Source: Setoptus koraiensis
Lineage: Eukaryota; Animalia; Arthropoda
DNA: 63,869 bases
Reading direction: 5' to 3'
Assembly (NCBI GenBank): GCA_048013815.1
Contig: CM106586.1
Span: 2,294,132-2,358,000 of the forward strand
The notes beneath the pieces were generated by a model that searched no databases, was not told the DNA's origin, and saw nothing but the letters and a program-made list of their open reading frames with translations. The translations under genes and the position numbers were made by a program. Of this stretch, positions 1 to 43,050 are shown one piece after another. Positions within the stretch are counted from its first letter, which is position 1; the number at the start of each line of letters is the position of its first letter.

Positions 1-3000
1 AAGTCTCATCAAAACCATGACTTTTTCACCATGCACGTTTGTTTGGCCCATGCACCCACTGCAACACGCACTGGCACTGGCACTGGCACACAACAGCCAA
101 CAATAGGCAATACCGGTGCTAGATGGCATCTAATCTGGGCTGGCACTAGCTGAAAAATGATCCCATCAGGCGCCCCCTTTTCTCATGCCTTCTCTCGCTC
201 CTCACATAGTAGAAATAATAAATGAATGAATGAATTTGCCATCTCGCTGGCTCTCAAATGAGCGAATGAGTTACCAGAGTCACCCTACAGAGAGCAATTG
301 ACTTGTGGGACCCAGACTGAAACTCGTGGCGCAAGTGGTGCCATGCTAACTTGCGAAAACGCCAACTTGAAGCCTTCTTTTCTTTTTCTAGTTTCATATT
401 TTCATATTATCGAATTATTTTATATTTGATGCGCTAAAAGAAGAGAACGATAAAAGATGCTGGGCGAGAACAGAAATGGATATATGCTGAAATGGCCTTT
501 CAGATATTGAAACCGGCTCGCAAAAACTATGAGAAAACTCGATAGCAGTTGAGCAAAGTTAAGCTGAGCAAACAATAACAAGCTGCCAGCTTGGATGACT
601 TAATATATCATATTAATTTCAAATGTCATCTTTCTCGAGGTGAAAGAATCGATAGGAGGCCGAGCTGCCTACTCACAGTTCACGCAACCAAAACACTTGG
701 CTTTCTCGACGACATCCCTTTTAACCTTTGGCGAGCCTCTTATATTTCGCTCATTTAGTTTTATCTATATTATCTATCTTACTCGATCATTCTAAAACTT
801 CTATCGTCAGACTCTAGTTGAACCAATATAAACTTTACATAACTTTACATAATACAATCATCTGCAAATTTGATTGATCACCGACAAGTATCTTTCGTGC
901 TCATATAAACAACTATTTTTCTGAATAAAACATTCACCTATCATCGTTGTCGATCACATGAGCTCGCAGATCATTCTATCTCATCTCATCTTGCTCAATG
1001 CCACCAAATGTAGACGATCGTTTATCGCGTCTGCACACTGTCTGTTCATTTTTGCATTCTTAGAAAAGAAAACTTTGATGCAAGATGGAATAAAATGTTT
1101 ATGTACTACGTCATTGGATAATTTATTCACCTTTAAAAACTTTTCTCCACTAGTTTACATAAGAATAAAAGTAAACATTCAACAACAAACGACACAATAA
1201 TTGGTGATGATGATATCCATTTAACTATTCGAGAAAAGGGCAAGACATTTTTAGGGACCAAAATTGAACGTCGATTGTACGGTATTGGGTAAACGACAGC
1301 ACGTTGTGTTCAAGTTAAAAGTTGCAAGAGAAAGATTTTGTGTAGAGTGGCCAACTACAATAGAGCCTCTATAATGGGGGCACGTCACCAGTGAGATTTC
1401 TTCTCGTGAGAAATCTTACGAAACATAATTGGCTTCGGGTCTTTAGTAATTGCGCAACTATCGGTTCTCATGACATCGCATGCTCGCAAACGTGCTGTTA
1501 GATCCTTTTTTCTATATCTATTGCTATTGAGTTTGATTCAAGCTGATGTTATATTTGGTTGACCTATACAAATACCTAGGGCAATTTGTAGAATGGTTTG
1601 CCACTATGCGAGCGTGGCTGACTTTTTTTAAGAAACGGACAATGACCATTGTGAGGGACACAGGAAACTTTTCCTTTGTGATTGGGTGGCCTACAAAATG
1701 ATCTTGTGCAATGGTGGTTCCCATTGCAAGACCAACGGGAATCAAGTTGGATTATTTTGTCAGTGGGGACGAGCAATCGTATTTGCAATTATTCTATCTG
1801 CTTTTCTATCACCGGTATTTGGTGTCTGGTGTAATTGACACGCAGTGAACAACAATAAGGCATCAGGACAGATTTGAATCAATTATGTGCAATCAATTAT
1901 TTATTGATCACAGTGTGTGAATGTCAGGTATTTGTGTTGTGTTTTTGTAGTAGTTAGTTAGGTATAAGTTGGGCGTTAGTTTAGGCGAGTTTAGTAGAAA
2001 CAATTGATGATGGATGACAGATGAGGGCTGCCAATGGAAGATAAAAGATTAACATGGGAGCAGGTTGAATAGAAAAGAGATTGATTCATTTACTTGTGTG
2101 GTATGTAGTATGTGGTATAGAGGGGGATTTGGACAAAATGTTTGTGCATCGATCACTAGTACCACCGAACTTGTAACGTTGATATCAAAAGAGATCAGCG
2201 AGACAAGATGAGAGTAAAATGAGTGTAAGATGAGTGTACACTGGCTACAAACAACAACATATCATGTATTATGTAACAAACATACACATAAACTCGATAG
2301 TTGCAGACAACACGAAAAAAAGGGAACCAATGATGCAACCGATTGGAGACTGTTGAGATGTTGTTTGGATGCTGTTTTGGTTTGGAACGTGCACCATGAG
2401 AGCAGCCACTGATAAAACTAATGGCCCATGCAAATGATGAAAGCGAGTAAAATATATACTGTGTATATAACTGTGGATAAATAAGTTAACTCGCTATTAT
2501 AGATGTTTGTCCATGATAGTGTTATTAGCTCTTTGTCTTTGTCTTTGTCTCAGTCTCTCTCGTGATGTGCCCAGACCGAGCAAGACAATTGGCAATTGAA
2601 TTCGCTAGCCATACAATGAGGCCCAACCAGCGAAACAACATTAGCAGTGATGATAGTAGTTGTATAAAGAGTAGATGGCAAAAAGATTGCAATGGAGTCA
2701 AGGCGAACCGAGGCGACTCGAAACGACTCGAAACGACACACACACACACACAACAAAACAAAACCAAACCAAACAAGAGAAAACAAAACTGGCCAACAGA
2801 AAAGAACATAAGAGGACTAGAGAAAACTAAACAGAACGGAAGTTTCAGTGATCTCCGATCAATCACGTTGGTGTTGTATAGTTAGCCTAATCTAGCTAAT
2901 AAGATGCTCTTATCGCTTCAACTACTTTGGGCCAGATTATATATAGAATATATCATCGGGCCGATGCACATTACTGGGCACAAAATGTGTGACAATTTGC

Positions 3001-3933
3001 ATGCTATTGGGCATGCATTGCGTTCGTGTCAAACACTGAATAAATGTAAAATAAAGTTATACACAGCAAGAGGGAGAGAGAGAGAGAAGTGTCATCTAGT
3101 TGACACACACAACCATTTGTGTGTCATATTCATATTGCCAACAAGCTATGTTGTAATCGAATGAGTGATGTTATCAGAGTGTTAATGTTGCATGAGGAGC
3201 CTCATTAGTAATTGATTCGTATCCAAAAACATAACCAACTACGACGAAGAGAATTAATGAGCGCTAGTAATTGATTAATCGAGCTAATTAAATACGCAAC
3301 TTGCTATACGATATCGCGTCGAAAAGTGCCACCAGTAGCAACACCAATAGTGACACCAATATCAATGACTGATATCACGCAAGATGAAAAGCAGATAAAT
3401 GTATAAATTGGCTATTCTCCAAGCAACAGAGGTAACTACTTTACTTTGGTTAGTTGGTTGTGTTATATGATCGAGTCATGCGGCTGCTGTTGATATTACG
3501 TGTTACAGCAGCCATGTTTATATCACGTATAGTCAGCGTATGATTATTATGGTATGAAGATGTGAATGAATGAGATATTAAGGAGATCTTAAGAAGGCAA
3601 CAGCGAACCAAAGCGAGCGAATGTGTGAGGGCCGGCAGTTGTTGTGATTGTGCCACAATGTCACTATGTAATTATCATGGTGATGATAGTGGGAGCCACT
3701 GAACTTGATGACGCGCCGTAATATTAATATTATTTTTATCATCACACACTGATGAAGACACATTGTAGTAGCGAATGGTAGTGGTAGTGGTATTACGTAA
3801 CATGGATATAAACAATAGCATGGCAGAGATGGCAGTATAAATAATGATAATAACAATAACATAAGAACAGAAATATTATGTAATGTTATGTTATATCATA
3901 TTAATTATCCTCACCGCACACATCATTATCATC

Positions 3934-3935
<2 letters not shown>

Positions 3936-3976
<41 letters not shown>
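3936..3976. repeat. (TG)n microsatellite
   Basis: About 20 uninterrupted TG units. Confidence 0.95.
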
Positions 3977-3979
<3 letters not shown>

Positions 3980-4263
3980 TTATGACTCTTGCCTCTGAGG
4001 TCTAGTTACCAAGTGTAACACTGATATAAGTTTAAGCTCTCGCATCGCACAACACTCAAACAGTGCTCAAATGCTACTCAAACAATACACCAACAACAGT
4101 CGGCTCTGCAGCTAATTGCACAATTTATTTAATTATTATTATTATTTGTTCGTTGATCGCTTTTTGTGACATCATTGCACGCAAATACTTGAAAAAACAA
4201 TAGATGGACACATCTTTGCATGCGCAAATCAATTCAAAATCAATTATAGGGGCAAGGACTTAC

Positions 4264-35427: not shown

Positions 35428-36624
35428 TGTTTCGATTTAGAGCCCTATCTCATGTTGCACGGAGAGAAACCATCAAATGATTGGCGTTGTCCTATCTGTA
35501 ATACATTAGCACCTTATCACAGATTAGAAGTCGATAATTATATTAGATCAATTATTGAGAACAATAATTATTCGTTAGAAATGGATGATGTAATTATAGA
35601 TTCTAACGCGGCCTGGAAGCCCAGTTTTGTTAAGTCTAATCAATTAAACAGCAATAGCTTATTGGCTAGTAGAGGAAATACACCACAGCAACGCCAACAG
35701 GCGGTTAAACAAACAAGTGCAAACAATAGGCAACCAAACACTGTATCCAATTCCAACAATACCTTGACACAGAGTATTGGATCGCCTGCTTTTAGCACCC
35801 ACAATAACATTTGTTTGCCAGTGTTAAGCACTAAACAACCGCCAACGAATAACACTAGTGGATATATTTATGATCCATTACTAGATCGTTCCGATGCAAG
35901 TATCAACAAATCTTGCGATGGTTTAGATCCATTAACAGCCATGGAAAGATCTTTGATGCAACACGAACAACAGATGGGACCACCATTCATTGGCAGCAAC
36001 TTGATGGAGCCAGTAAACCAAGCAACTGCAACCACAACAACATCGACTAACCCAGATAACAACAATTCAATTCAACAATCAGTTACTCCTGTCACAACAG
36101 TGCCAGTTACTCCCATTATAGCGGCACCTGTCACTATAACAAGGAGTTGTACATCAACACCAGCAACTCCATCCTCAACAATACTAGCAAATTGTGGACC
36201 AGAAACACCCGCAACACCTAGCAATTCTGGCAGTCAGCATTGTGGACCACCATCTGTTTCAGGAACTAGTCTACCCTGCACAACAACATCTTCTTCAACG
36301 TCATCGTCATCTGCTTCGCTATCATCGTTATTAGATAATCAGCAACATTCTAATGGGCTATCATCATCTTCATCGTCTTCGTCTTCCATTCAACAAGATA
36401 ATATAATTCATTCTAATCAACAGAATTTCTCAAATAATCAACAAAACCACCAGAACAGAAATGGCGATGATAATTCTCAATTGTCGACTGAACATGATCA
36501 ATTTGTAGTTGATAATAATAATACTAGGTCCAACAGTAGTCGATCGAATGTCACCAACAATGATAAAATTAACAATAATAATGAACACGACCCCAACGAA
36601 CAAAGAGAGCCCGATCCATTGGAT
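35428..36624 (+). CDS. ZMIZ1: ZMIZ/tonalli-like exon, second half of the SP-RING plus low-complexity tail
   Basis: CFDLEPYL..WRCPIC..LEVDNYI; acceptor atcag|, donor GTAAGT at 36625. Confidence 0.93.
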
Positions 36625-36727
36625 GTAAGTGAATGAAATTTCGCGTTATCGTTACTATAATGATTGAGTGCTAATTTTTTCATCTTTTATTAACTCTCCT
36701 TTGATTTGTTTCGTTTATCTGTTACAG

Positions 36728-36847: not shown

Positions 36848-36889
36848 TCAAATATAATAGGGTATCACCTGAAAGCACTGATTTATGTA

Positions 36890-37010
36890 TCAACTTTGTC
36901 CATAGGTTAATACTTGGGAGCAGATCTCACAAACTCTCACAGGTTTTTTAATTTTGAATTTTGTTATCAGTAATTCCTTTGGGGAGCACTTTGCACAAAG
37001 TATTCGGCCA
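36890..37010 (-). CDS. ANKFY1: ANKFY1-like terminal exon, second half of the FYVE finger
   Basis: Not in the ORF track. Acceptor ttttag|, reads (C)GRILCAKCSPKELLITKFKIKKPVRVCEICSQVLTYGQS*. Confidence 0.92.
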
Positions 37011-37120
37011 CTAAAAATGTCAATAATGAAATAAATATATCGTTAATTGTTAGTAAAACTGATTTGTCACATTAACCAAGATTAATTAATGTATACGTGA
37101 CATCATTGAGTGATACTAAC

Positions 37121-38985
37121 CAATGCCTGCAATGATGTTTTCTATTCGTAATGCCAAACTTTGCTTGACATTCAGAACAGTTGTCACCATCTGACCACGT
37201 TGGCTCCTGAGGCAAATAATCTAATAATCGATGAAGTAGATTTTTCGAGGCAACTTGGATATTGAATATATTTGTTCCGTCTCTATTGGATGTACCGAGA
37301 CATGCACCACAGCTAATGAGTGCCCTACATAGATTGGCGTTGCCATTCTTGTAGGCTAAAAGAAGAGGAGTATTACCTTCAGCATCTTGAGTGTTAATTG
37401 GATATTCGGGCATGCATTGAATGATTAATTCAAAGATAGCTGCAGCATTTGCCTTGCCATGTTGAGCAAGCAAATGAACTGCATGTTGACCTCTTAAATT
37501 GAGTGCCTCTGCGTTGATCCGTGATTCGGATAATAGTAATTGACAAGTATTTAAGTTACTATTTTGACATGCCAAATGGAGGGCATTGTTCTTATCTACA
37601 TCAGCAGCATCAAAATTGATATTATTCTCAATTAATACTTGGCAAATAGTATGATGGTCCTTCGAAGCAGCTATATGCAAAGCAGTCTGATTTTGGATCG
37701 TTACATCATTTATATTGGCACCAGCCAATAATAGATTTCTTAATATAAGTTCTGAGCCTGACTCTGCTGCCAAATGTAGCGGACTCATTCTTGATGAGTC
37801 TTGAACTTTTGATTGAATGTTCGCATGGACAGACAATAGAAATAACACACTTTCTATGTCTTTCTTTTGAATTGCCAAGTGCAGAAATGTACGACCTTTA
37901 GCATCATATTTTTCCGCTGCATGACACTCTCTGCCTAAAATGATTTTCGCAGCATCGAAATTCTTTGTTGACATAGCTATTGAGAAAGCATTTTGCCCGT
38001 AATTGTCCTTTAATTTTAAATCTAAATGTGGTTGTGCAATCAACAGAGAAGTAATACTATTATGTTGATTGATAATGGCGATATGTAGTGGCGTTCTGCC
38101 TTCGGAATCCTGTGAGTTAATATCGGCTTGGTGTTCTAACAATGTTTGCACTACACTTTCCAAGGCCCAAGCACAAGCCAAATGAAGGGGTGCTTGCCTT
38201 TCGAATGCTTCGTCATCACCGACGCCATTAGATAACGGCAAACGAGGCGATTCACAATCGCATCCACTTCTAATCAAGAAACAAGCGGCCTCCTCATCGT
38301 TGATGTCTAACGCTTTGTGCAATAAATTCTGTTTGTATTTTGAAGTTTCCTCCTCCCAAGAGTTTGTGTCGCATCCATGCTCAACAAGAATTGAAGCGAT
38401 ATCATGATAGCCTTCGACCAAGGCCAGCCACAAAGGCGAGGAGCCATTAGAACATTTGGTGTCGATTTGATTTGGTTTCTTTTTACATATCATTCGCACG
38501 ATATCAGGCGAATGTGCACAAATAGCTAGTTCTAATGGAGTTTTTTTGTCTGGGGTGCGAATCTCAAAATCGGCATGATCTAAAAGGAACTTGGCACCTT
38601 CTTCGTCTTTTTTCATGATTGCCAGATGTAACAATGTTTCGCCGGCGTCATTCAATATGTTAATATTTGCATTTATTAGCATCCGGGCAACTTTATCCAG
38701 TCCGTAATTTGGTGCGAGAGATAATAGACATTTGTCGCACAAAAGGTTCAAATTCTTAGCAATAGCGGAGGTGGTGGTGGTGTCGGCCGAGTTTTCTAAG
38801 CTTGTAGGAGTCGGTGGTTCACTTATGGTCTCAGTCGATTCATCCAAGATAGCGGTATTACTACTGCCAGTCGTAGTGGCGGCCGCGATTGAGTCAGGAA
38901 CCTGTTTCGTATCTAAATCTATGAGATGGCTACTATCGAATAGAGTTGTACGACATCGTTGACACTTGAAGAGATTGACTTCCAT
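37121..38985 (-). CDS. ANKFY1: Rabankyrin-5 (ANKFY1)-like exon 1: atypical N-terminal CxxC cassette, ankyrin repeats, first half of FYVE; 661 aa in total
   Basis: Runs such as ACFLIRSGCD, KKDIESVLFLLSVHAN and RNLLLAGA, plus FYVE WxxD..RKHHCRH, match ANKFY1. Donor TG|GTTAGT at 37120. Confidence 0.92.
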
Positions 38986-39981
38986 AATTGATGAAAATTA
39001 TTCTAATGATAATAACGAAAATTTGATAATATGTTGGATGATACCAATAGTATTATTCCTACTCAGATGGCTAAAAATGCTGCAATAGCTATAACATGTG
39101 ATCACTGAACATCCTACACGATTGTGTAATATTCTATAGGGTGTGAGGATCAATTCGTTTAGTTCCTACAGATTAAGCTATGCTGCCTTCCACAGTGCAT
39201 TTTTTGCACAAAAACACTCCTTGCTGATTGAGATTTTTCCAATGCGAACTGATGTTTTATGAAAGATTCACCAGAGGCGCTGGTCAAATTTTGTTCAACA
39301 GAGAGTGCTGTGAAGCGCCGCCCTCGCGGATCTTTTACGAGTCAATGCAGATGCATCAGAAAAACCCTATCCAAGCTGCGCTTTCCTAAATCGCACAGTT
39401 CGTGCGTTAGCAAGATTCTGAGCATGTTTGGCGCCGCCATACATTAGGAACACACTAAGCACTGCGTACTTTCTGTGCTTTTGTGCTGCGCAGGGGACTT
39501 GAGACATCGACGAGTTGATTTTCACACCCTAAAGGGTGTTTCAAACATAGCGCACAACTATAAACTACACTGTGCTGCTCGCTGGCACATATTCTTCCTG
39601 ATCCAGTGATCAAATTAAATTTAGCACAATAAATCAGATGGATTGTGTCGAGGTCAACTAAGGCCCCAATTATTCGGCACAATTATTGCTTTCGCGCTGC
39701 ACACAGCCTCTCTACGCACACTAAAGCTTCCACAGTACATCGACAAATATCGAAAAAAAAGCATTCAAGTGCAGACGGAATGCATGTGTAAAGGGTGTTT
39801 TAAGCAGAGAGTGCAAAAGCATTAATAAGGCTAAGTCTGCCCTCCACAGTGCTTTATTTTTCGCACCAACCGCAACCAACCAACTGAAAAATAATTGTAT
39901 AAATATACATTGCTGTTATATTTATAATAACAGTGATAATAATTATAATTGTGAAAACCATCATTATAACAATCATTAATA

Positions 39982-42900
39982 ATGACCCAACAAATGAATG
40001 AACTTTCTCAAGATGGAGGTTACAAAATTCAAACCTTCTACCCTAACATGGAGCAAATGAAAGACTTCTCAGCTTATATCAAATATATTGAGTCAACTGG
40101 AGCACATAGAGCAGGATTGGCTAAAATTGTCCCACCTGAAGAATGGAAACCAAGGAAAAAAACTTACGAAGATGATGATGTATACAAATTAGTGATACCT
40201 ACACCTATTGAACAAATTGTTAAAGGCGCAAAGGGTCTATACCAGCAATACCACGAGGAAAAAAAGAAAATAACAGTCAGAGATTTCAAGAAGAAGGCTG
40301 AAGAGAGTTACTCCACACCAGAGCACGCTAGTGATGAAGATTTAGAGAGAATTTATTGGAAAAATATCTCATTTAAGCCCTCTATTTATGGAGCTGATGT
40401 TCCTGGTTCATTATATGATGAAGATGTCGATGAATTCAATATAGTCAAACTAAAAACTATTCTAGACGATGTTGTGGGCGATTATAACATTTCTATACAG
40501 GGCGTCAATACAGCATATTTATATTTTGGAATGTGGAAAACAACTTTCTGCTGGCACACAGAAGACATGGACTTATACAGTATCAATTATTTGCATTTTG
40601 GCTCGCCCAAAGCATGGTATTGCATCTCTCCAGAGCATGGCAAAAGATTTGAGAGATTGGCCGCCGGTTTCTTTCCACAATTCCACAAAAGCTGCCGGGC
40701 CTTCCTTCGTCATAAGACAACACTCATCTCACCACAGATATTGAAAAAATATTCTATACCATTCTCTAAAATCGTCCAGAAACAGAGAGAATTTATGATC
40801 ACATTTCCTTATTCATATCATTCTGGATTCAATCATGGCTTCAATTGTGCGGAATCTACTAATTTCGCCATAGAGAGGTGGATAGAGTTTGGTAAATGGG
40901 CTACTAGGTGCGATTGTCACGATTCAGTTAAGATCTCTATGCAAACATTTGTTAAAAAATATCAGCCAGACCGATATGAGAGCTGGTTGATGGGTAAAGA
41001 TATATGCCAAGATCCAAGAGAACTAAAACATCTTGGTCCTTGCCCTAGGCCATCTGATTACGATTTGGATATTCTTGGTCTTGGAAGGAGAGAAGAATTG
41101 AACGGAAAACTTATCGAGATGTCCTCCGAGGATTCTAAATCGGAAGTAGACCAAAATGCTCTCAAAATTAAGACCAAAGCGGCCCTCAAAGCTTTCCCGA
41201 CCTTAGAAGAGACAATCCAAAGATTAAATAAACGCAAACAAAATAAAAATCGTGGCGTGCAACCTCACATAGAAATGCACTCTTACGCTCGATCAACGAT
41301 GATAAGACCACACAAAACTATACTGCCGAGGACGATGGTCCCTATATTAAATCCGCTATCTACAAGTGACGTTGAAGACACGAAAGGAAATTTTCTCTTT
41401 CTGCAACGGAACATAGAGACTTGGAATTTAAATAAATTTAACCCTCTACTGCCCGTCGGTGTTGCACAGAATAATCGACACCAATCTGGTGACAGTAATA
41501 ATAACGAATCATCTGGTAGGAACACAGACGAAGAAGTCATCAAGATGGCGTATTGTTTAAGCGAAGCCAGCAAGACCAAGTGTCCCAAGCCGATTCTTGA
41601 TAGACCAGATAAACGACCTAGGTTTGCTGCAGCAATCACTTCGGAAAGATTTCGATTACTACCCAATGACTGCACTTTCACACAAGAAAAGAGATTTAAC
41701 AAGTGTATGGCATCTCAGCCGCCGCACTGCTCTGTATGTCAATTCGTTAGAGAATTCCCAACCGATGATAAATTTTGGGAACCTGTGTGTTCTTCAAATA
41801 CAGAACCCACCGTCTCACCCCCAACCACTGCACCAGTGTTGATGCCTCACAGTGTATTCAGACAGATAGAGGAAAAGAAGAAAGACGACTCGGCAGGAGA
41901 AACCACAACTGAGACTCCTATTGGCTCTACTTCAAATTCTGCGTCTACAAGTTGCGACATAAATGATGATAGTCATGTTGAAGAATTGCTAAACTGCTCG
42001 GTTTGTACTCTTTGTGTGCATCGGGTGTGCTACGGATTGTCTAGAGCTAAATCAGCAAATGACAAAAAGGATTGGACTTGTGATAGATGCTTGGAGAAAA
42101 ATCGCAGCTTTATTTATTGTTATATGTGTCCCTGCCGTGGAGGGGCGCTCAAAGAAATCCCCAACAACCGTTGGGTTCATATTACGTGTGCTTTATCCAC
42201 TCCTTTTTTCACGATGACTGATCTCAGATTTCCTTGGTCCATACATATAGATGATACTGCTAGAAAAGAGGAGCAGAGGCAACAAGCAGCAGGTGGAATA
42301 ACTTGTCATTTCTGCAAATCAGAACCCAATAGTAACTCTACGTATAAGTCAATATTCGGCTACTATCTTAGATGTGATTTCGAGGAAAATCGCCTCGGCG
42401 ACTGCTCTGATTGCTCTGTATGGTTCCACGCTACCTGCGGTCATAGAAGAGGAGCCATTTTTGAGCCTCGCGACTGGTGCTCAGACCTTGATTATTCTTT
42501 CGAAGCCTATAGAATACCCTTCAAAATCACCTGCCCGAAGCATAACGATCCAGAAAGTGCGGACGAAAACGAAAATCAAGTGTTCAAAAATCATGATGAA
42601 ATTGATGAGACAACCGGGAAGCGAAAATTGCCTAGGATACCTGAAGGAACTCATGTTATCGCTGAGCACAGCGAGGATACATTGTACCACGATGCTATCA
42701 TAGTGAAATACGTTGTGAAAACTTATCACCATGTCTTCTGTGCAGCCGATAACTCAACATGCGAAGTACCCATTGAAGACATTGTGTCGTGCATTTCTGA
42801 GGGGGAAAAGGACACGCGGAAGAGGAACTGGCAAGTAGGTGATAACTTATCTATTAAATATCGCAAGGAAATTCTGTTCGGTAGATGGGTTCGCAGCACA

Positions 42901-43050
42901 CAGGAAGAAGTATATAGGGTAAAGTTTGAGCTCAAGAACGAGAAACCGTACGATCATGTGAAGAGAGAGAATATATATTTGAACGTTAGCGAAATGCCAA
43001 ACCGGTTGTTGAGGAGGTACGAGACGCGTTGCGCAATTTATTACAAATGA
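39982..43050 (+). CDS. KDM4: KDM4/JMJD2 histone lysine demethylase (JmjN-JmjC-PHD-ePHD-double Tudor), intronless, 1022 aa
   Basis: JmjN HRAGLAKIVPP; JmjC FCWHTEDMDLYSINYLHFG and YHSGFNHGFNCAESTNFA with intact HxE..H iron ligands; Cys/His PHD spacing; Tudor EDIVS..VKRENIY. Confidence 0.97.
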   Translation: MTQQMNELSQDGGYKIQTFYPNMEQMKDFSAYIKYIESTGAHRAGLAKIVPPEEWKPRKKTYEDDDVYKLVIPTPIEQIVKGAKGLYQQYHEEKKKITVRDFKKKAEESYSTPEHASDEDLERIYWKNISFKPSIYGADVPGSLYDEDVDEFNIVKLKTILDDVVGDYNISIQGVNTAYLYFGMWKTTFCWHTEDMDLYSINYLHFGSPKAWYCISPEHGKRFERLAAGFFPQFHKSCRAFLRHKTTLISPQILKKYSIPFSKIVQKQREFMITFPYSYHSGFNHGFNCAESTNFAIERWIEFGKWATRCDCHDSVKISMQTFVKKYQPDRYESWLMGKDICQDPRELKHLGPCPRPSDYDLDILGLGRREELNGKLIEMSSEDSKSEVDQNALKIKTKAALKAFPTLEETIQRLNKRKQNKNRGVQPHIEMHSYARSTMIRPHKTILPRTMVPILNPLSTSDVEDTKGNFLFLQRNIETWNLNKFNPLLPVGVAQNNRHQSGDSNNNESSGRNTDEEVIKMAYCLSEASKTKCPKPILDRPDKRPRFAAAITSERFRLLPNDCTFTQEKRFNKCMASQPPHCSVCQFVREFPTDDKFWEPVCSSNTEPTVSPPTTAPVLMPHSVFRQIEEKKKDDSAGETTTETPIGSTSNSASTSCDINDDSHVEELLNCSVCTLCVHRVCYGLSRAKSANDKKDWTCDRCLEKNRSFIYCYMCPCRGGALKEIPNNRWVHITCALSTPFFTMTDLRFPWSIHIDDTARKEEQRQQAAGGITCHFCKSEPNSNSTYKSIFGYYLRCDFEENRLGDCSDCSVWFHATCGHRRGAIFEPRDWCSDLDYSFEAYRIPFKITCPKHNDPESADENENQVFKNHDEIDETTGKRKLPRIPEGTHVIAEHSEDTLYHDAIIVKYVVKTYHHVFCAADNSTCEVPIEDIVSCISEGEKDTRKRNWQVGDNLSIKYRKEILFGRWVRSTQEEVYRVKFELKNEKPYDHVKRENIYLNVSEMPNRLLRRYETRCAIYYK

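What the first reader, a model, noticed from the sequence alone, without database searches (positions are those of the whole stretch)
38728..38985. Rabankyrin-5 with its BTB half replaced by a DUSP12/RNF180-like CxxC...CxxC cassette
Knowledge: ANKFY1 is normally about 1170 aa (BTB, ~21 ankyrins, FYVE). Seen: this gene encodes 661 aa. Ankyrin homology begins abruptly at LLSLA (residue 87). Before it are FKCQRCRTTLFDSSHL (C8, C11) and NLLCDKC (C83, C86), which recall YKCRKCRRSLFRSSSI and QLLCPKC of the DUSP12/Yvh1 zinc-binding domain, separated by a T/S-rich linker. No splice site is apparent at the junction. Inference: a deletion-fusion or domain-shuffled chimera giving a new zinc-ribbon-ANK-FYVE endosomal protein.
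Basis: partly seen in the sequence, partly recalled or inferred. Interest (0 to 1): 0.72.

Follow-up and report, generated by a model that had tools for sequence, protein, structure and literature searches.

The report
Endosome protein with a borrowed front end
In this mite the only gene for the endosome scaffold ANKFY1 has lost its usual front part and now starts with about 64 codons copied from another gene, a real but modest case of a gene patched together from two others.

Summary
The minus-strand gene 38985..36890 has one 110-nt intron and encodes 661 aa. Residues 1-86 carry C8/C11 and C83/C86, followed by about 10 ankyrin repeats and an intact FYVE finger.

It is a true chimera. Window 38795-38995, plus a 31-nt patch at 39074-39104, is a 90%-identical copy of the 5' end of a gene 837 kb away on the same chromosome. 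That parent is a 277-aa RING-less protein with the RNF180/DUSP12-type (DSPRC) zinc-binding domain. Two independent DNA assemblies span the junction with no differences. cDNA-type contigs show the gene is spliced and expressed, but they stop at 38596, short of the 5' end.

- The second CxxC (CDKC) is ANKFY1 sequence. The closest relatives read CEKCLLAMAP where this gene reads CDKCLLSLAP.
- Only half of the zinc domain was copied, and its nearly invariant His is Asp here.
- The closest relatives already have a short ANKFY1 of 700-790 aa (BTB, about 10 ankyrin repeats, FYVE). So only about 150 aa of BTB were replaced here.
- No BTB remnant or second ANKFY1 exists in the genome, and no database protein shares this N-terminus.

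The likely role of the copied piece is to supply a promoter, a start codon and a largely disordered tail. Interest is modest.

The parts
39074..39104 (-). 31-nt upstream patch shared with the parent gene's 5' flank. It marks the far end of the copied promoter-proximal sequence.
   Evidence: blastn gives 26/31 identical. The degenerate pattern occurs at only these two places in the 48.7-Mb genome, with 0 in the reversed control.
38986..38998 (-). 5' leader directly upstream of the ATG, copied from the parent (ATTTTCATCAATT ATG G). Kozak-like A at -3 and G at +4.
   Evidence: blastn gives 22/25 identical across the ATG. Parent-type contigs align to 38795-38995.
38795..38985 (-). Codons 1-64. This is the N-terminal zinc knuckle (LFKCQRCRTTLFDSSHLID) and the start of the S/T-rich linker of the RNF180-type DSPRC gene at G000:C2:1.4956 Mb.
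   Evidence: 159/176 nt are identical and 50/60 aa. dS is 0.24 and dN 0.09. D25 replaces the family's nearly invariant His.
38743..38794 (-). Junction zone, codons 65-81 (NSADTTTTSAIAKNLNL). It is low-complexity Thr-rich sequence followed by a possible remnant of the last BTB helix. The breakpoint lies somewhere in here.
   Evidence: There is no significant match to the parent beyond codon 64. tblastn with a relative starts at 38742. AKNLNLL loosely parallels RKFKLTLL of relatives.
37121..38742 (-). ANKFY1-derived part of exon 1. It holds the end of the BTB (LCDKC), about 10 ankyrin repeats and the first half of the FYVE finger (to HHCRH).
   Evidence: It is 63-72% identical to the short ANKFY1 of relatives and 48-58% to named rabankyrin-5 proteins. 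Supported by alignment A2 and Pfam Ank and FYVE hits.
37011..37120 (-). 110-nt GT..AG intron inside the FYVE-coding sequence.
   Evidence: The sequence shows it. Contigs of X7 and X8 skip exactly 37011-37120 with 0 differences.
36890..37010 (-). Exon 2: the rest of the FYVE finger (CGRILCAKCS...PVRVCEIC) and the TGA stop at 36892-36890.
   Evidence: Read directly. It aligns with the C-termini of relatives in A2. It is covered by spliced contigs.
39135..39863 (.). Two dispersed repeat families (about 39135-39531 and 39530-39863) fill most of the gap to the divergent KDM4-like gene. They leave only about 150 nt of unique upstream sequence.
   Evidence: The own-genome DNA search finds dozens of copies at 71-82% identity. 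Contig depth is 230-4000 here against about 109 over the gene.

Best explanation
This is the genome's only ANKFY1 (rabankyrin-5) gene, rebuilt at its 5' end.

The related mites already carry a short ANKFY1 with a BTB domain joined directly to the last ~10 ankyrin repeats and the FYVE finger. In this lineage, the promoter side and the first ~145 codons (essentially the whole BTB domain) were then lost. They were replaced by a ~200-310-nt copy of the 5' end of a gene 837 kb away on the same chromosome. That parent is a RING-less RNF180-type (DSPRC, DUSP12/Yvh1-like) zinc-binding-domain protein.

The copy supplies promoter-proximal sequence, a strong-context ATG, one zinc knuckle and ~40 residues of S/T-rich linker, all in frame with the remaining ANKFY1 body.

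The product most likely still works as a PI3P-binding endosomal ankyrin scaffold through its intact FYVE finger and conserved repeats. It lacks the BTB-dependent functions (self-association, CUL3 coupling). The borrowed N-terminus most likely acts as a start-codon and promoter donor and a largely disordered tail, not as a complete zinc-binding domain.

Shown: the origin of each part, the reality of the junction, splicing and expression of the gene body, absence of a BTB in the genome, and absence of the architecture elsewhere. Inferred: transcription from the copied promoter, translation from ATG 38985, and all functional consequences.
For: Origin of the 5' end:
- Residues 4-73 match a second locus, G000:C2:1495385-1495594, at 74% identity. 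BLASTP gives 50/60 identical for residues 5-64. blastn gives 159/176 nt plus 22/25 across the ATG.
- A 31-nt upstream patch is unique to the two loci.
- Borders are sharp on both sides.

Direction of the copy:
- The parent ORF (277 aa) has the whole domain, and so does its ortholog P0121.
- The parent matches the Yvh1 zinc-binding domain (6n8m_Y, E 1.8e-4).
- Of its 202 profile hits, the best named one is Sarcoptes scabiei 'RNF180'. Long hits carry RING plus RNF180_C.

The ANKFY1 body:
- It is 63-72% identical to the 700-790-aa BTB+ANK+FYVE proteins of relatives and 48-58% to named rabankyrin-5.
- CDKCLLSLAP aligns with CEKCLLAMAP.
- The FYVE motifs WxxD, RKHHCRHCG and RVC are present.

Absences:
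- No second ANKFY1 and no BTB remnant in the genome, the window or beside the ARMC5-like ortholog.
- No protein of 350-1115 aa in 5.8 billion shares residues 1-81.

Reality and expression:
- Independent contigs span the junction with 0 differences. Spliced contigs cover 36850-38096 and 38293-38596.

Translation from ATG 38985:
- There is a stop 4 codons upstream of the ATG, and the frame is open into the repeats.
- omega is 0.38 overall. The 19 knuckle codons have 0 nonsynonymous and 3 synonymous changes.

Not a whole domain:
- The C-terminal half of the DSPRC domain is absent, and the nearly invariant His is Asp25.
- AlphaFold2 gives pLDDT below 50 for residues 1-82.

Rearrangement:
- The neighbours of the gene in relatives (ARMC5-like, AIP) lie 200 kb away and on the other contig here.
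Against: - No RNA contig covers 38597-38985, so transcription of the chimeric 5' end and use of ATG 38985 are not shown.
- The selection signal rests on 22 substitutions and cannot be split between the two copies.
- The exact breakpoint (codons 65-81) lies in low-complexity sequence and cannot be placed.
- The four cysteines (C8, C11, C83, C86) sit with a spacing like that of the two knuckles of Yippee/DSPRC-type domains. Pfam's weak Yippee-Mis18 alignment uses both pairs. A zinc site therefore cannot be excluded, and AlphaFold2 with a 3-row alignment for this part is a weak test.
- The closest relatives are only 72% identical, so when the replacement arose and how widely it is shared are unknown.
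Confidence: 0.75

Rival explanations
1. One reading: the N-terminus is a working new zinc module. C8/C11 of the borrowed knuckle and C83/C86 together bind one zinc. This gives a zinc-ribbon-like clasp in front of the ankyrin repeats with a function of its own.
For: - There are four Cys in two CxxC pairs 71 residues apart, a spacing like that of Yippee/DSPRC domains. Pfam's Yippee-Mis18 model aligns residues 5-86 to profile positions 2-64 (E 0.018 for the whole ORF, 3.6e-4 for the piece alone).
- MAFFT places NLLCDKC on the family's second knuckle, GRLxCPxxKC.
- The knuckle has no amino-acid change against the parent.
Against: - C83/C86 are inherited ANKFY1 residues, and the relatives that share them have no first knuckle. 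C86 is S, F or M in several relatives.
- Everything else in the domain is missing (the ARxGxFxF strand, the CxC, LPxIHIxRSKVD), and the nearly invariant His is Asp25.
- The Pfam score is below the gathering cut-off.
- AlphaFold2 gives pLDDT 26-43 over residues 1-80.
Confidence: 0.12
2. The copied segment serves only as promoter and 5' UTR. Translation starts at an internal Met (for example Met102), so the RNF180-like residues are never made.
For: No RNA or peptide evidence covers the 5' end. The N-terminus is predicted to be disordered.
Against: - ATG 38985 is the first ATG after an in-frame stop and has A-3/G+4, the same context as in the parent.
- The frame stays open for 101 codons into the repeats.
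- Starting at Met102 would drop residues 82-101, the first retained repeat, which aligns with the relatives (CDKCLLSLAPNYGLDKVAR against CEKCLLAMAPEVGLDKVAR).
- omega is 0.38, with 0 of 3 knuckle changes nonsynonymous.
Confidence: 0.1
3. Assembly artefact: two loci that share ~200 nt were joined wrongly, and the true ANKFY1 has a BTB exon elsewhere.
For: A 90%-identical 200-nt repeat sits exactly at the junction. The upstream region is repetitive.
Against: - Contigs from two other studies span 36850-39422 and 38127-39362 with 0 differences. The parent locus appears in the same runs as separate contigs with 19-20 differences.
- No BTB match to ANKFY1 of relatives occurs anywhere in the 48.7-Mb assembly.
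Confidence: 0.02

Closest known systems
ANKFY1 / Rabankyrin-5 (Rab5 effector; BTB, 21 ankyrin repeats, FYVE; PMC514490)
   Same: The C-terminal ~580 aa are orthologous, with 48-58% identity to named rabankyrin-5 proteins. The FYVE finger has its WxxD, RKHHCRHCG and RVC motifs. It is the only such gene in the genome.
   Different: There is no BTB domain, no BACK-like region and only about 10 of 21 repeats. The total is 661 aa instead of about 1100-1170. The BTB is the part linked to self-association and to CUL3 (PMC514490, PMC5703617), so those couplings should be gone.
Short ANKFY1 of related mites (P0001-P0020, 700-790 aa, unnamed Logan/JGI/ENA assemblies)
   Same: They have the same shortened body, with the BTB end joined straight to the last ~10 repeats and the FYVE. 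Identity is 63-72%. They share the CEKC/CDKC-LL-x-x-AP junction.
   Different: They keep a Pfam-recognised BTB domain (PF00651) of about 150 aa with an N/S/T-rich insert. They are single ORFs without the FYVE intron, and they have other neighbours (ARMC5-like, AIP). None has the RNF180-like N-terminus.
RNF180 (Rines) N-terminal DSPRC domain and the related DUSP12/Yvh1 zinc-binding domain (PDB 6n8m chain Y; PMC12052773 citing Ogawa 2008)
   Same: Residues 5-23 are identical to the first knuckle of the genome's own DSPRC-type protein. They fit the family consensus KCRKCRxxLF.
   Different: Only the first ~20 residues of the ~110-residue domain are present. The conserved His is Asp. The second knuckle, the CxC and the LPxIHIxRSKVD strand are absent. 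There is no RING, no RNF180_C and no phosphatase domain.
Chimeric genes formed by 5'-end or promoter capture after partial duplication (a known route of new-gene origin; own knowledge)
   Same: A short partial duplicate carrying promoter-proximal sequence and the first codons of one gene is fused in frame to the body of another. It is recent (dS about 0.24) and lineage-specific.
   Different: Here the recipient is the only copy of a conserved trafficking gene, so the event replaced a domain rather than adding a spare chimeric paralog.

Membership tests
ANKFY1 / Rabankyrin-5 | C-terminal FYVE finger with WxxD, R(R/K)HHCR and RVC motifs | tested here: met
   Pfam finds FYVE at residues 599-621 of exon 1. 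WSD, RKHHCRHCG and RVC are read across the intron. The region aligns with relatives.
ANKFY1 / Rabankyrin-5 | Orthologous ankyrin-repeat body (best hits are rabankyrin-5; single copy) | tested here: met
   Top named hits are rabankyrin-5/ANKFY1 at 48-58% identity, E 1e-160 to 1e-223. The next ankyrin proteins in the genome are only 26-29% identical.
ANKFY1 / Rabankyrin-5 | N-terminal BTB/POZ domain | tested here: not met
   No Pfam BTB hit. tblastn with the BTB parts of 10 relatives finds nothing in the window, the genome or beside the ARMC5-like ortholog. Only the last few residues (LCDKC) remain.
ANKFY1 / Rabankyrin-5 | About 21 ankyrin repeats | tested here: not met
   Pfam gives about 10 repeats. 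Alignment A2 shows that about 420 columns of the full-length proteins P0022 and P0037 are absent, as they are in the short forms of relatives.
ANKFY1 / Rabankyrin-5 | Binds Rab5-GTP and PI3P on early endosomes | not testable with these tools
   This needs pull-down, liposome and localisation experiments.
DSPRC (RNF180 N-terminal / DUSP12-Yvh1 zinc-binding) domain | First knuckle KCxxCRxxLF | tested here: met
   Residues 7-16 are KCQRCRTTLF. C8, C11, R12 and L15 fall in invariant columns of A6. The knuckle is identical to the paralog's.
DSPRC (RNF180 N-terminal / DUSP12-Yvh1 zinc-binding) domain | Nearly invariant His about 10 residues after the knuckle | tested here: not met
   The parent has H28 and the chimera has D25 (CAT to GAT).
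DSPRC (RNF180 N-terminal / DUSP12-Yvh1 zinc-binding) domain | C-terminal half: W..G+L.C(P)..C.AR.G.F.F....C.C....LP.I.I.RS+VD | tested here: not met
   It is present in the parent (residues 202-258) and in P0121, and matches Yvh1 289-350. It is absent from the window gene. The CDKC that MAFFT places on the second knuckle is ANKFY1 sequence.
Yippee-Mis18 (PF03226) | Score above Pfam's gathering cut-off | tested here: not met
   15.7 bits for the whole ORF and 21.1 bits for the 87-aa piece, against a cut-off of 26.6.

The most novel reading that the evidence does not exclude
By accident, the borrowed knuckle (C8, C11) and the retained ANKFY1 pair (C83, C86) recreate a four-cysteine zinc clasp with the spacing of a Yippee/DSPRC site. 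Alternatively, the orphan knuckle docks in trans onto the C-terminal half of the parent DSPRC protein. That protein's own domain is assembled from two pieces 170 residues apart. Either way the chimera would gain a new regulated interaction. It would show a zinc site or a split domain being re-formed from parts of two unrelated genes.
Probability: 0.1. Interest if true: 0.7.

Novelty: new variant of a known kind. Interest (0 to 1): 0.4.

Why it matters
This is a cleanly documented, recent, natural domain replacement in the single copy of a conserved endosomal scaffold. Both parents, the copied segment (to within ~50 nt) and the ancestral state in relatives are all identified.

Together with the short BTB-ANK-FYVE form in related mites, it is a two-step natural deletion series of Rabankyrin-5. 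First ~11 repeats and the BACK-like region were lost, then the BTB. This suggests that the last ~10 repeats plus the FYVE finger are the core an animal cannot lose, and that BTB/CUL3 coupling can be dispensed with in a reduced genome.

It also shows how a half zinc-binding domain can be carried along as a passenger when a promoter and start codon are captured. It does not open a new kind of biology.

Tried and rejected
- Misassembly: rejected, because independent contigs span the junction.
- A hidden BTB exon or a second ANKFY1: none in the genome, in the window, or next to the ARMC5-like ortholog that flanks ANKFY1 in relatives.
- Second CxxC derived from the parent's second knuckle: rejected. 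The parent has KCKKDDC there and DNA homology ends at codon 64. The motif is shared with ANKFY1 of relatives.
- Reverse direction of the copy (ANKFY1 to the RNF180-like gene): rejected. The knuckle is ancestral in the DSPRC family, from Yvh1 to RNF180.
- ESM Atlas search of the parent: no usable hit.
- Profile search of the PDB with A3: no better than the single sequence.
- Word search with residues 1-81: 88 candidates, none significant.
- The bacterial promoter/terminator scan is irrelevant for a eukaryote and is ignored.
- AlphaFold2 of residues 1-260: the ankyrin part is confident and residues 1-82 are not. This is neither support for nor a real test against a zinc site.
- RNA evidence for the 5' end: the cDNA-type contigs stop at 38596, and the only contig over 38882-38995 in X7 is the parent's transcript, with 10 differences and 9 gap letters.
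- Complex prediction was not used, because the report does not claim a binding pair.
- The joined 661-aa spliced protein was not sent to any tool.
Full report
**What is there**

On the minus strand an ORF runs from ATG 38985 to a stop at 37072 (637 aa). The tail of that ORF is intronic. After ...HHCRH the sequence reads TG|GTTAGT...TTTTTAG|T. Removing 37120..37011 (110 nt, GT..AG) continues the FYVE finger (CGRILCAKCS...PVRVCEIC) to a TGA at 36892-36890.

An in-frame TAA lies four codons upstream of the ATG (open frame 641 aa against ORF 637 aa). The ATG has A at -3 and G at +4.

Pfam finds ankyrin families over roughly residues 90-590 (10 stretches of PF00023) and FYVE from residue 599. For residues 5-86 it finds only a sub-threshold Yippee-Mis18 match (21.1 bits against a cut-off of 26.6).

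**Is the junction real, and is the gene used?**

The window is G000:C2:2294132-2358000 of a 48.7-Mb, two-contig assembly. The best named relative of one parent gene is from Sarcoptes scabiei.

Laying public assemblies on 36850-39950 (3101 letters) gave these results:
- A 6762-nt contig of run X2 covers 36850-39422 with 0 differences.
- A 1266-nt contig of run X5 covers 38127-39362 with 0 differences. X2 and X5 come from studies other than the likely source sample.
- Misassembly at 38728-38795 is therefore excluded.
- Contigs of runs X7 and X8 skip exactly 37011-37120 with 0 differences. These runs hold cDNA, the intron is real and the gene is expressed.
- Those low-depth contigs reach only to 38596. 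The chimeric 5' end (38597-38985) is not shown to be transcribed.
- The one X7 contig over 38882-38995 has 10 differences and 9 gap letters. It is the transcript of the paralog described below.

**Where the N-terminus comes from**

Searching the animal's own genome with the protein found no second ANKFY1. The next ankyrin hits are 26-29% identical.

Residues 4-73, however, match a second place, G000:C2:1495385-1495594, at 74% identity. That place is 837 kb away on the same contig, and the ORF there is 277 aa. It begins MGANENLLFKCQRCRTTLFDSSHLIDSH..., continues through a ~170-residue S/T-rich linker, and ends ...WLKGRIKCKKDDCIARIGTFNFINSVKCDCDQYVLPPIQIGRSRVD.

The evidence for its family is as follows:
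- Its C-terminal part matches the zinc-binding domain of yeast Yvh1 (the DUSP12 orthologue) in the PDB (6n8m_Y residues 289-350, E 1.8e-4). Its knuckle lines up with Yvh1 230-246.
- A 254-aa orthologue with the same split layout exists in another assembly (P0121).
- A profile of these sequences found 202 relatives among 1.84 billion representatives. The best is a 129-aa Sarcoptes scabiei protein whose cluster mate is named RNF180. The long hits carry the domain at the N-terminus, followed by a RING finger and Pfam RNF180_C.

So the parent is a RING-less protein made of the RNF180-type N-terminal domain. The literature calls this the DSPRC domain, shared by DUSP12 and RNF180/Rines (PMC12052773, citing Ogawa 2008).

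**Extent and age of the copy**

At DNA level the two loci share the following:
- 22/25 nt across the ATG.
- A 9-nt indel.
- 159/176 nt (90%) up to codon 64.
- Borders are sharp. Parent-type contigs in X2, X5 and X7 align only to 38795-38995.

A further 31-nt patch at 39074-39104, which is 89-119 nt upstream of the ATG, matches the parent's 5' flank 26/31. It occurs nowhere else in the genome (2 hits, 0 in the control). The copy thus carried promoter-proximal sequence, the leader, the ATG and 64 codons.

Nei-Gojobori counts over 64 codons give dS 0.24, dN 0.09 and omega 0.38. The 19 codons of LFKCQRCRTTLFDSSHLID have three synonymous and no nonsynonymous differences. This is weak evidence, based on few changes that cannot be assigned to a lineage. 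It suggests that the frame has been read since the duplication.

**The second CxxC is not part of a cassette**

The closest relatives of the whole protein are P0001-P0020 (63-72% identity over 85% of the query, that is everything except the N-terminus). They are 700-790 aa, and nearly all carry BTB (PF00651), ankyrin repeats and FYVE. All come from unnamed Logan, JGI or ENA assemblies.

Aligned with full-length proteins (P0022 at 1114 aa; Strigamia P0037 at 1098 aa), they lack about 420 columns. That is the region after the BTB plus about 11 repeats. Their BTB end runs straight into the retained repeats...RKFKLTLLITKCEKCLLAMAPEVGLDKVARLL. The window gene reads ...AKNLNLLCDKCLLSLAPNYGLDKVARML.

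- C83 sits in a column invariant from these mites to the full-length proteins (the Cys of '...RCE...' at the BTB end).
- C86 is shared with six relatives in the alignments (P0001-P0003, P0005, P0010, P0017). It is S, F or M in five others (P0011, P0014, P0016, P0018, P0020).
- The parent's own second knuckle is KCKKDDC and was not copied.

In an alignment of DSPRC domains, MAFFT does place NLLCDKC on the family's GRLxCPxxKC. The contiguous match to ANKFY1 of relatives shows that this likeness is coincidental.

The same alignment shows two more things. The family's nearly invariant His after the first knuckle (H28 in the parent) is Asp25 in the chimera. Everything from the conserved Trp onwards is missing.

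**What was replaced**

The loss of half the repeats predates this species, so only the BTB (about 145-150 residues in relatives) was replaced here.

tblastn with P0001 residues 1-215 hits the genome only from residue 150 onwards (window 38742 downwards, 59% identity). The BTB parts of ten relatives find nothing in the window or beside the ARMC5-like orthologue (best E 0.046, scattered).

In relatives the gene is a single ORF flanked by an ARMC5-like gene (divergent, upstream) and an AIP-like or glutamate-receptor gene. Here the ARMC5-like orthologue is 200 kb away and the AIP orthologue is on the other contig. The gene instead sits between a ZMIZ/PIAS-like gene and a KDM4-like gene. The region has therefore been rearranged.

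The ~1 kb between the ATG and the KDM4-like gene is mostly two dispersed repeat families (39135-39531 and 39530-39863, dozens of copies). This leaves about 150 nt of unique upstream sequence, which includes the copied patch.

**Is the architecture known elsewhere?**

No. None of the top hits covers the N-terminus. A word search restricted to residues 1-81 among proteins of 350-1115 aa found nothing. The profile search found no protein that matches only the first knuckle in front of a long body. Because the nearest sampled relatives are only 72% identical, closer unsampled species may share it.

**How it most likely works**

*Shown:*
- An intact FYVE finger and a conserved repeat body.
- It is the only copy in the genome, and it is spliced and expressed.

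*Inferred:*
- It still binds PI3P-bearing endosomes and scaffolds partners through its repeats, as Rabankyrin-5 does (PMC514490).
- It has lost whatever the BTB provides. The literature links the BTB to homo- or heterodimerisation (PMC514490) and lists ANKFY1 among the BTB adaptor proteins of CUL3, which was needed for its endosomal localisation in HUVECs (PMC5703617).
- The new N-terminus is best read as a captured promoter, leader and start codon with a passenger peptide: one orphan zinc knuckle and a disordered S/T-rich tail.

AlphaFold2 on residues 1-260 gives confident repeats from about residue 84, but pLDDT of 26-43 over residues 1-80. The alignment for that part had only three rows, so this is no strong test.

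I put 0.75 on this account. The rivals are:
- A zinc clasp formed by the two CxxC pairs: 0.12.
- Translation from an internal Met: 0.10.
- An assembly artefact: 0.02.

**Comparison and verdict**

The gene is an orthologue of ANKFY1 that fails two of its defining features (BTB and repeat number). It is not a member of the DSPRC family, since only the first of three tested features is met. It works like known cases of chimeric genes formed by partial duplication and 5'-end capture. The unusual point is that the recipient is the only copy of a conserved gene.

- Novelty: a new variant of a known kind.
- Interest: 0.4.
- Together with the short form in relatives, it is a natural deletion series of Rabankyrin-5, but no new mechanism is implied.

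The spliced 661-aa model was never joined for a tool: exon 1 was searched by reference and exon 2 was read directly.

Noticed in passing
relatives: L021 7913-10111, L020 8001-10253; proteins P0001-P0020: A group of related mites has a 'mini' ANKFY1 of 700-790 aa. In it the BTB end is joined in frame to the last ~10 ankyrin repeats, and about 420 alignment columns (the BACK-like region and about 11 repeats) are missing. The BTB carries an N/S/T-rich low-complexity insert.
   Followed up: partly
G000:C2:1494779-1495612 (L002 895-1728, minus strand): The parent gene is a 277-aa RING-less RNF180-type protein. Its zinc-binding (DSPRC) domain is split by a ~170-residue S/T-rich linker between the first knuckle and the rest. 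An orthologue (P0121, 254 aa) has the same layout, while Sarcoptes has a compact 129-aa version. The parent gene is transcribed (X7 contig).
   Followed up: partly
window 39135-39863: Two dispersed repeat families (about 400 nt and about 235 nt plus an inverted ~75-nt end, possibly MITE-like) have dozens of copies at 71-82% identity across both contigs. They fill the divergent intergenic region between this gene and the KDM4-like gene.
   Followed up: partly
window 37011-37120: The 110-nt intron inside the FYVE-coding sequence is absent from the single-ORF genes of the related mites. So an intron was either gained here or lost there.
   Followed up: no
window 35452-36636 (+) and 39982-43050 (+): The neighbours are a ZMIZ/PIAS-like SP-RING protein (convergent) and a 1022-aa KDM4-like JmjC demethylase (divergent). 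Neither flanks ANKFY1 in relatives, whose neighbours (ARMC5-like, AIP-like) lie 200 kb away and on the other contig here.
   Followed up: partly
L002 1729-2028 (upstream of the parent ATG): The parent's 5' flank seems to hold an internal repeat of about 120 nt (TTAGAATAATTTT..CAATTAT occurs twice). This would explain why the shared 31-nt patch lies 207-237 nt upstream of the ATG there but only 89-119 nt upstream in the chimera.
   Followed up: no
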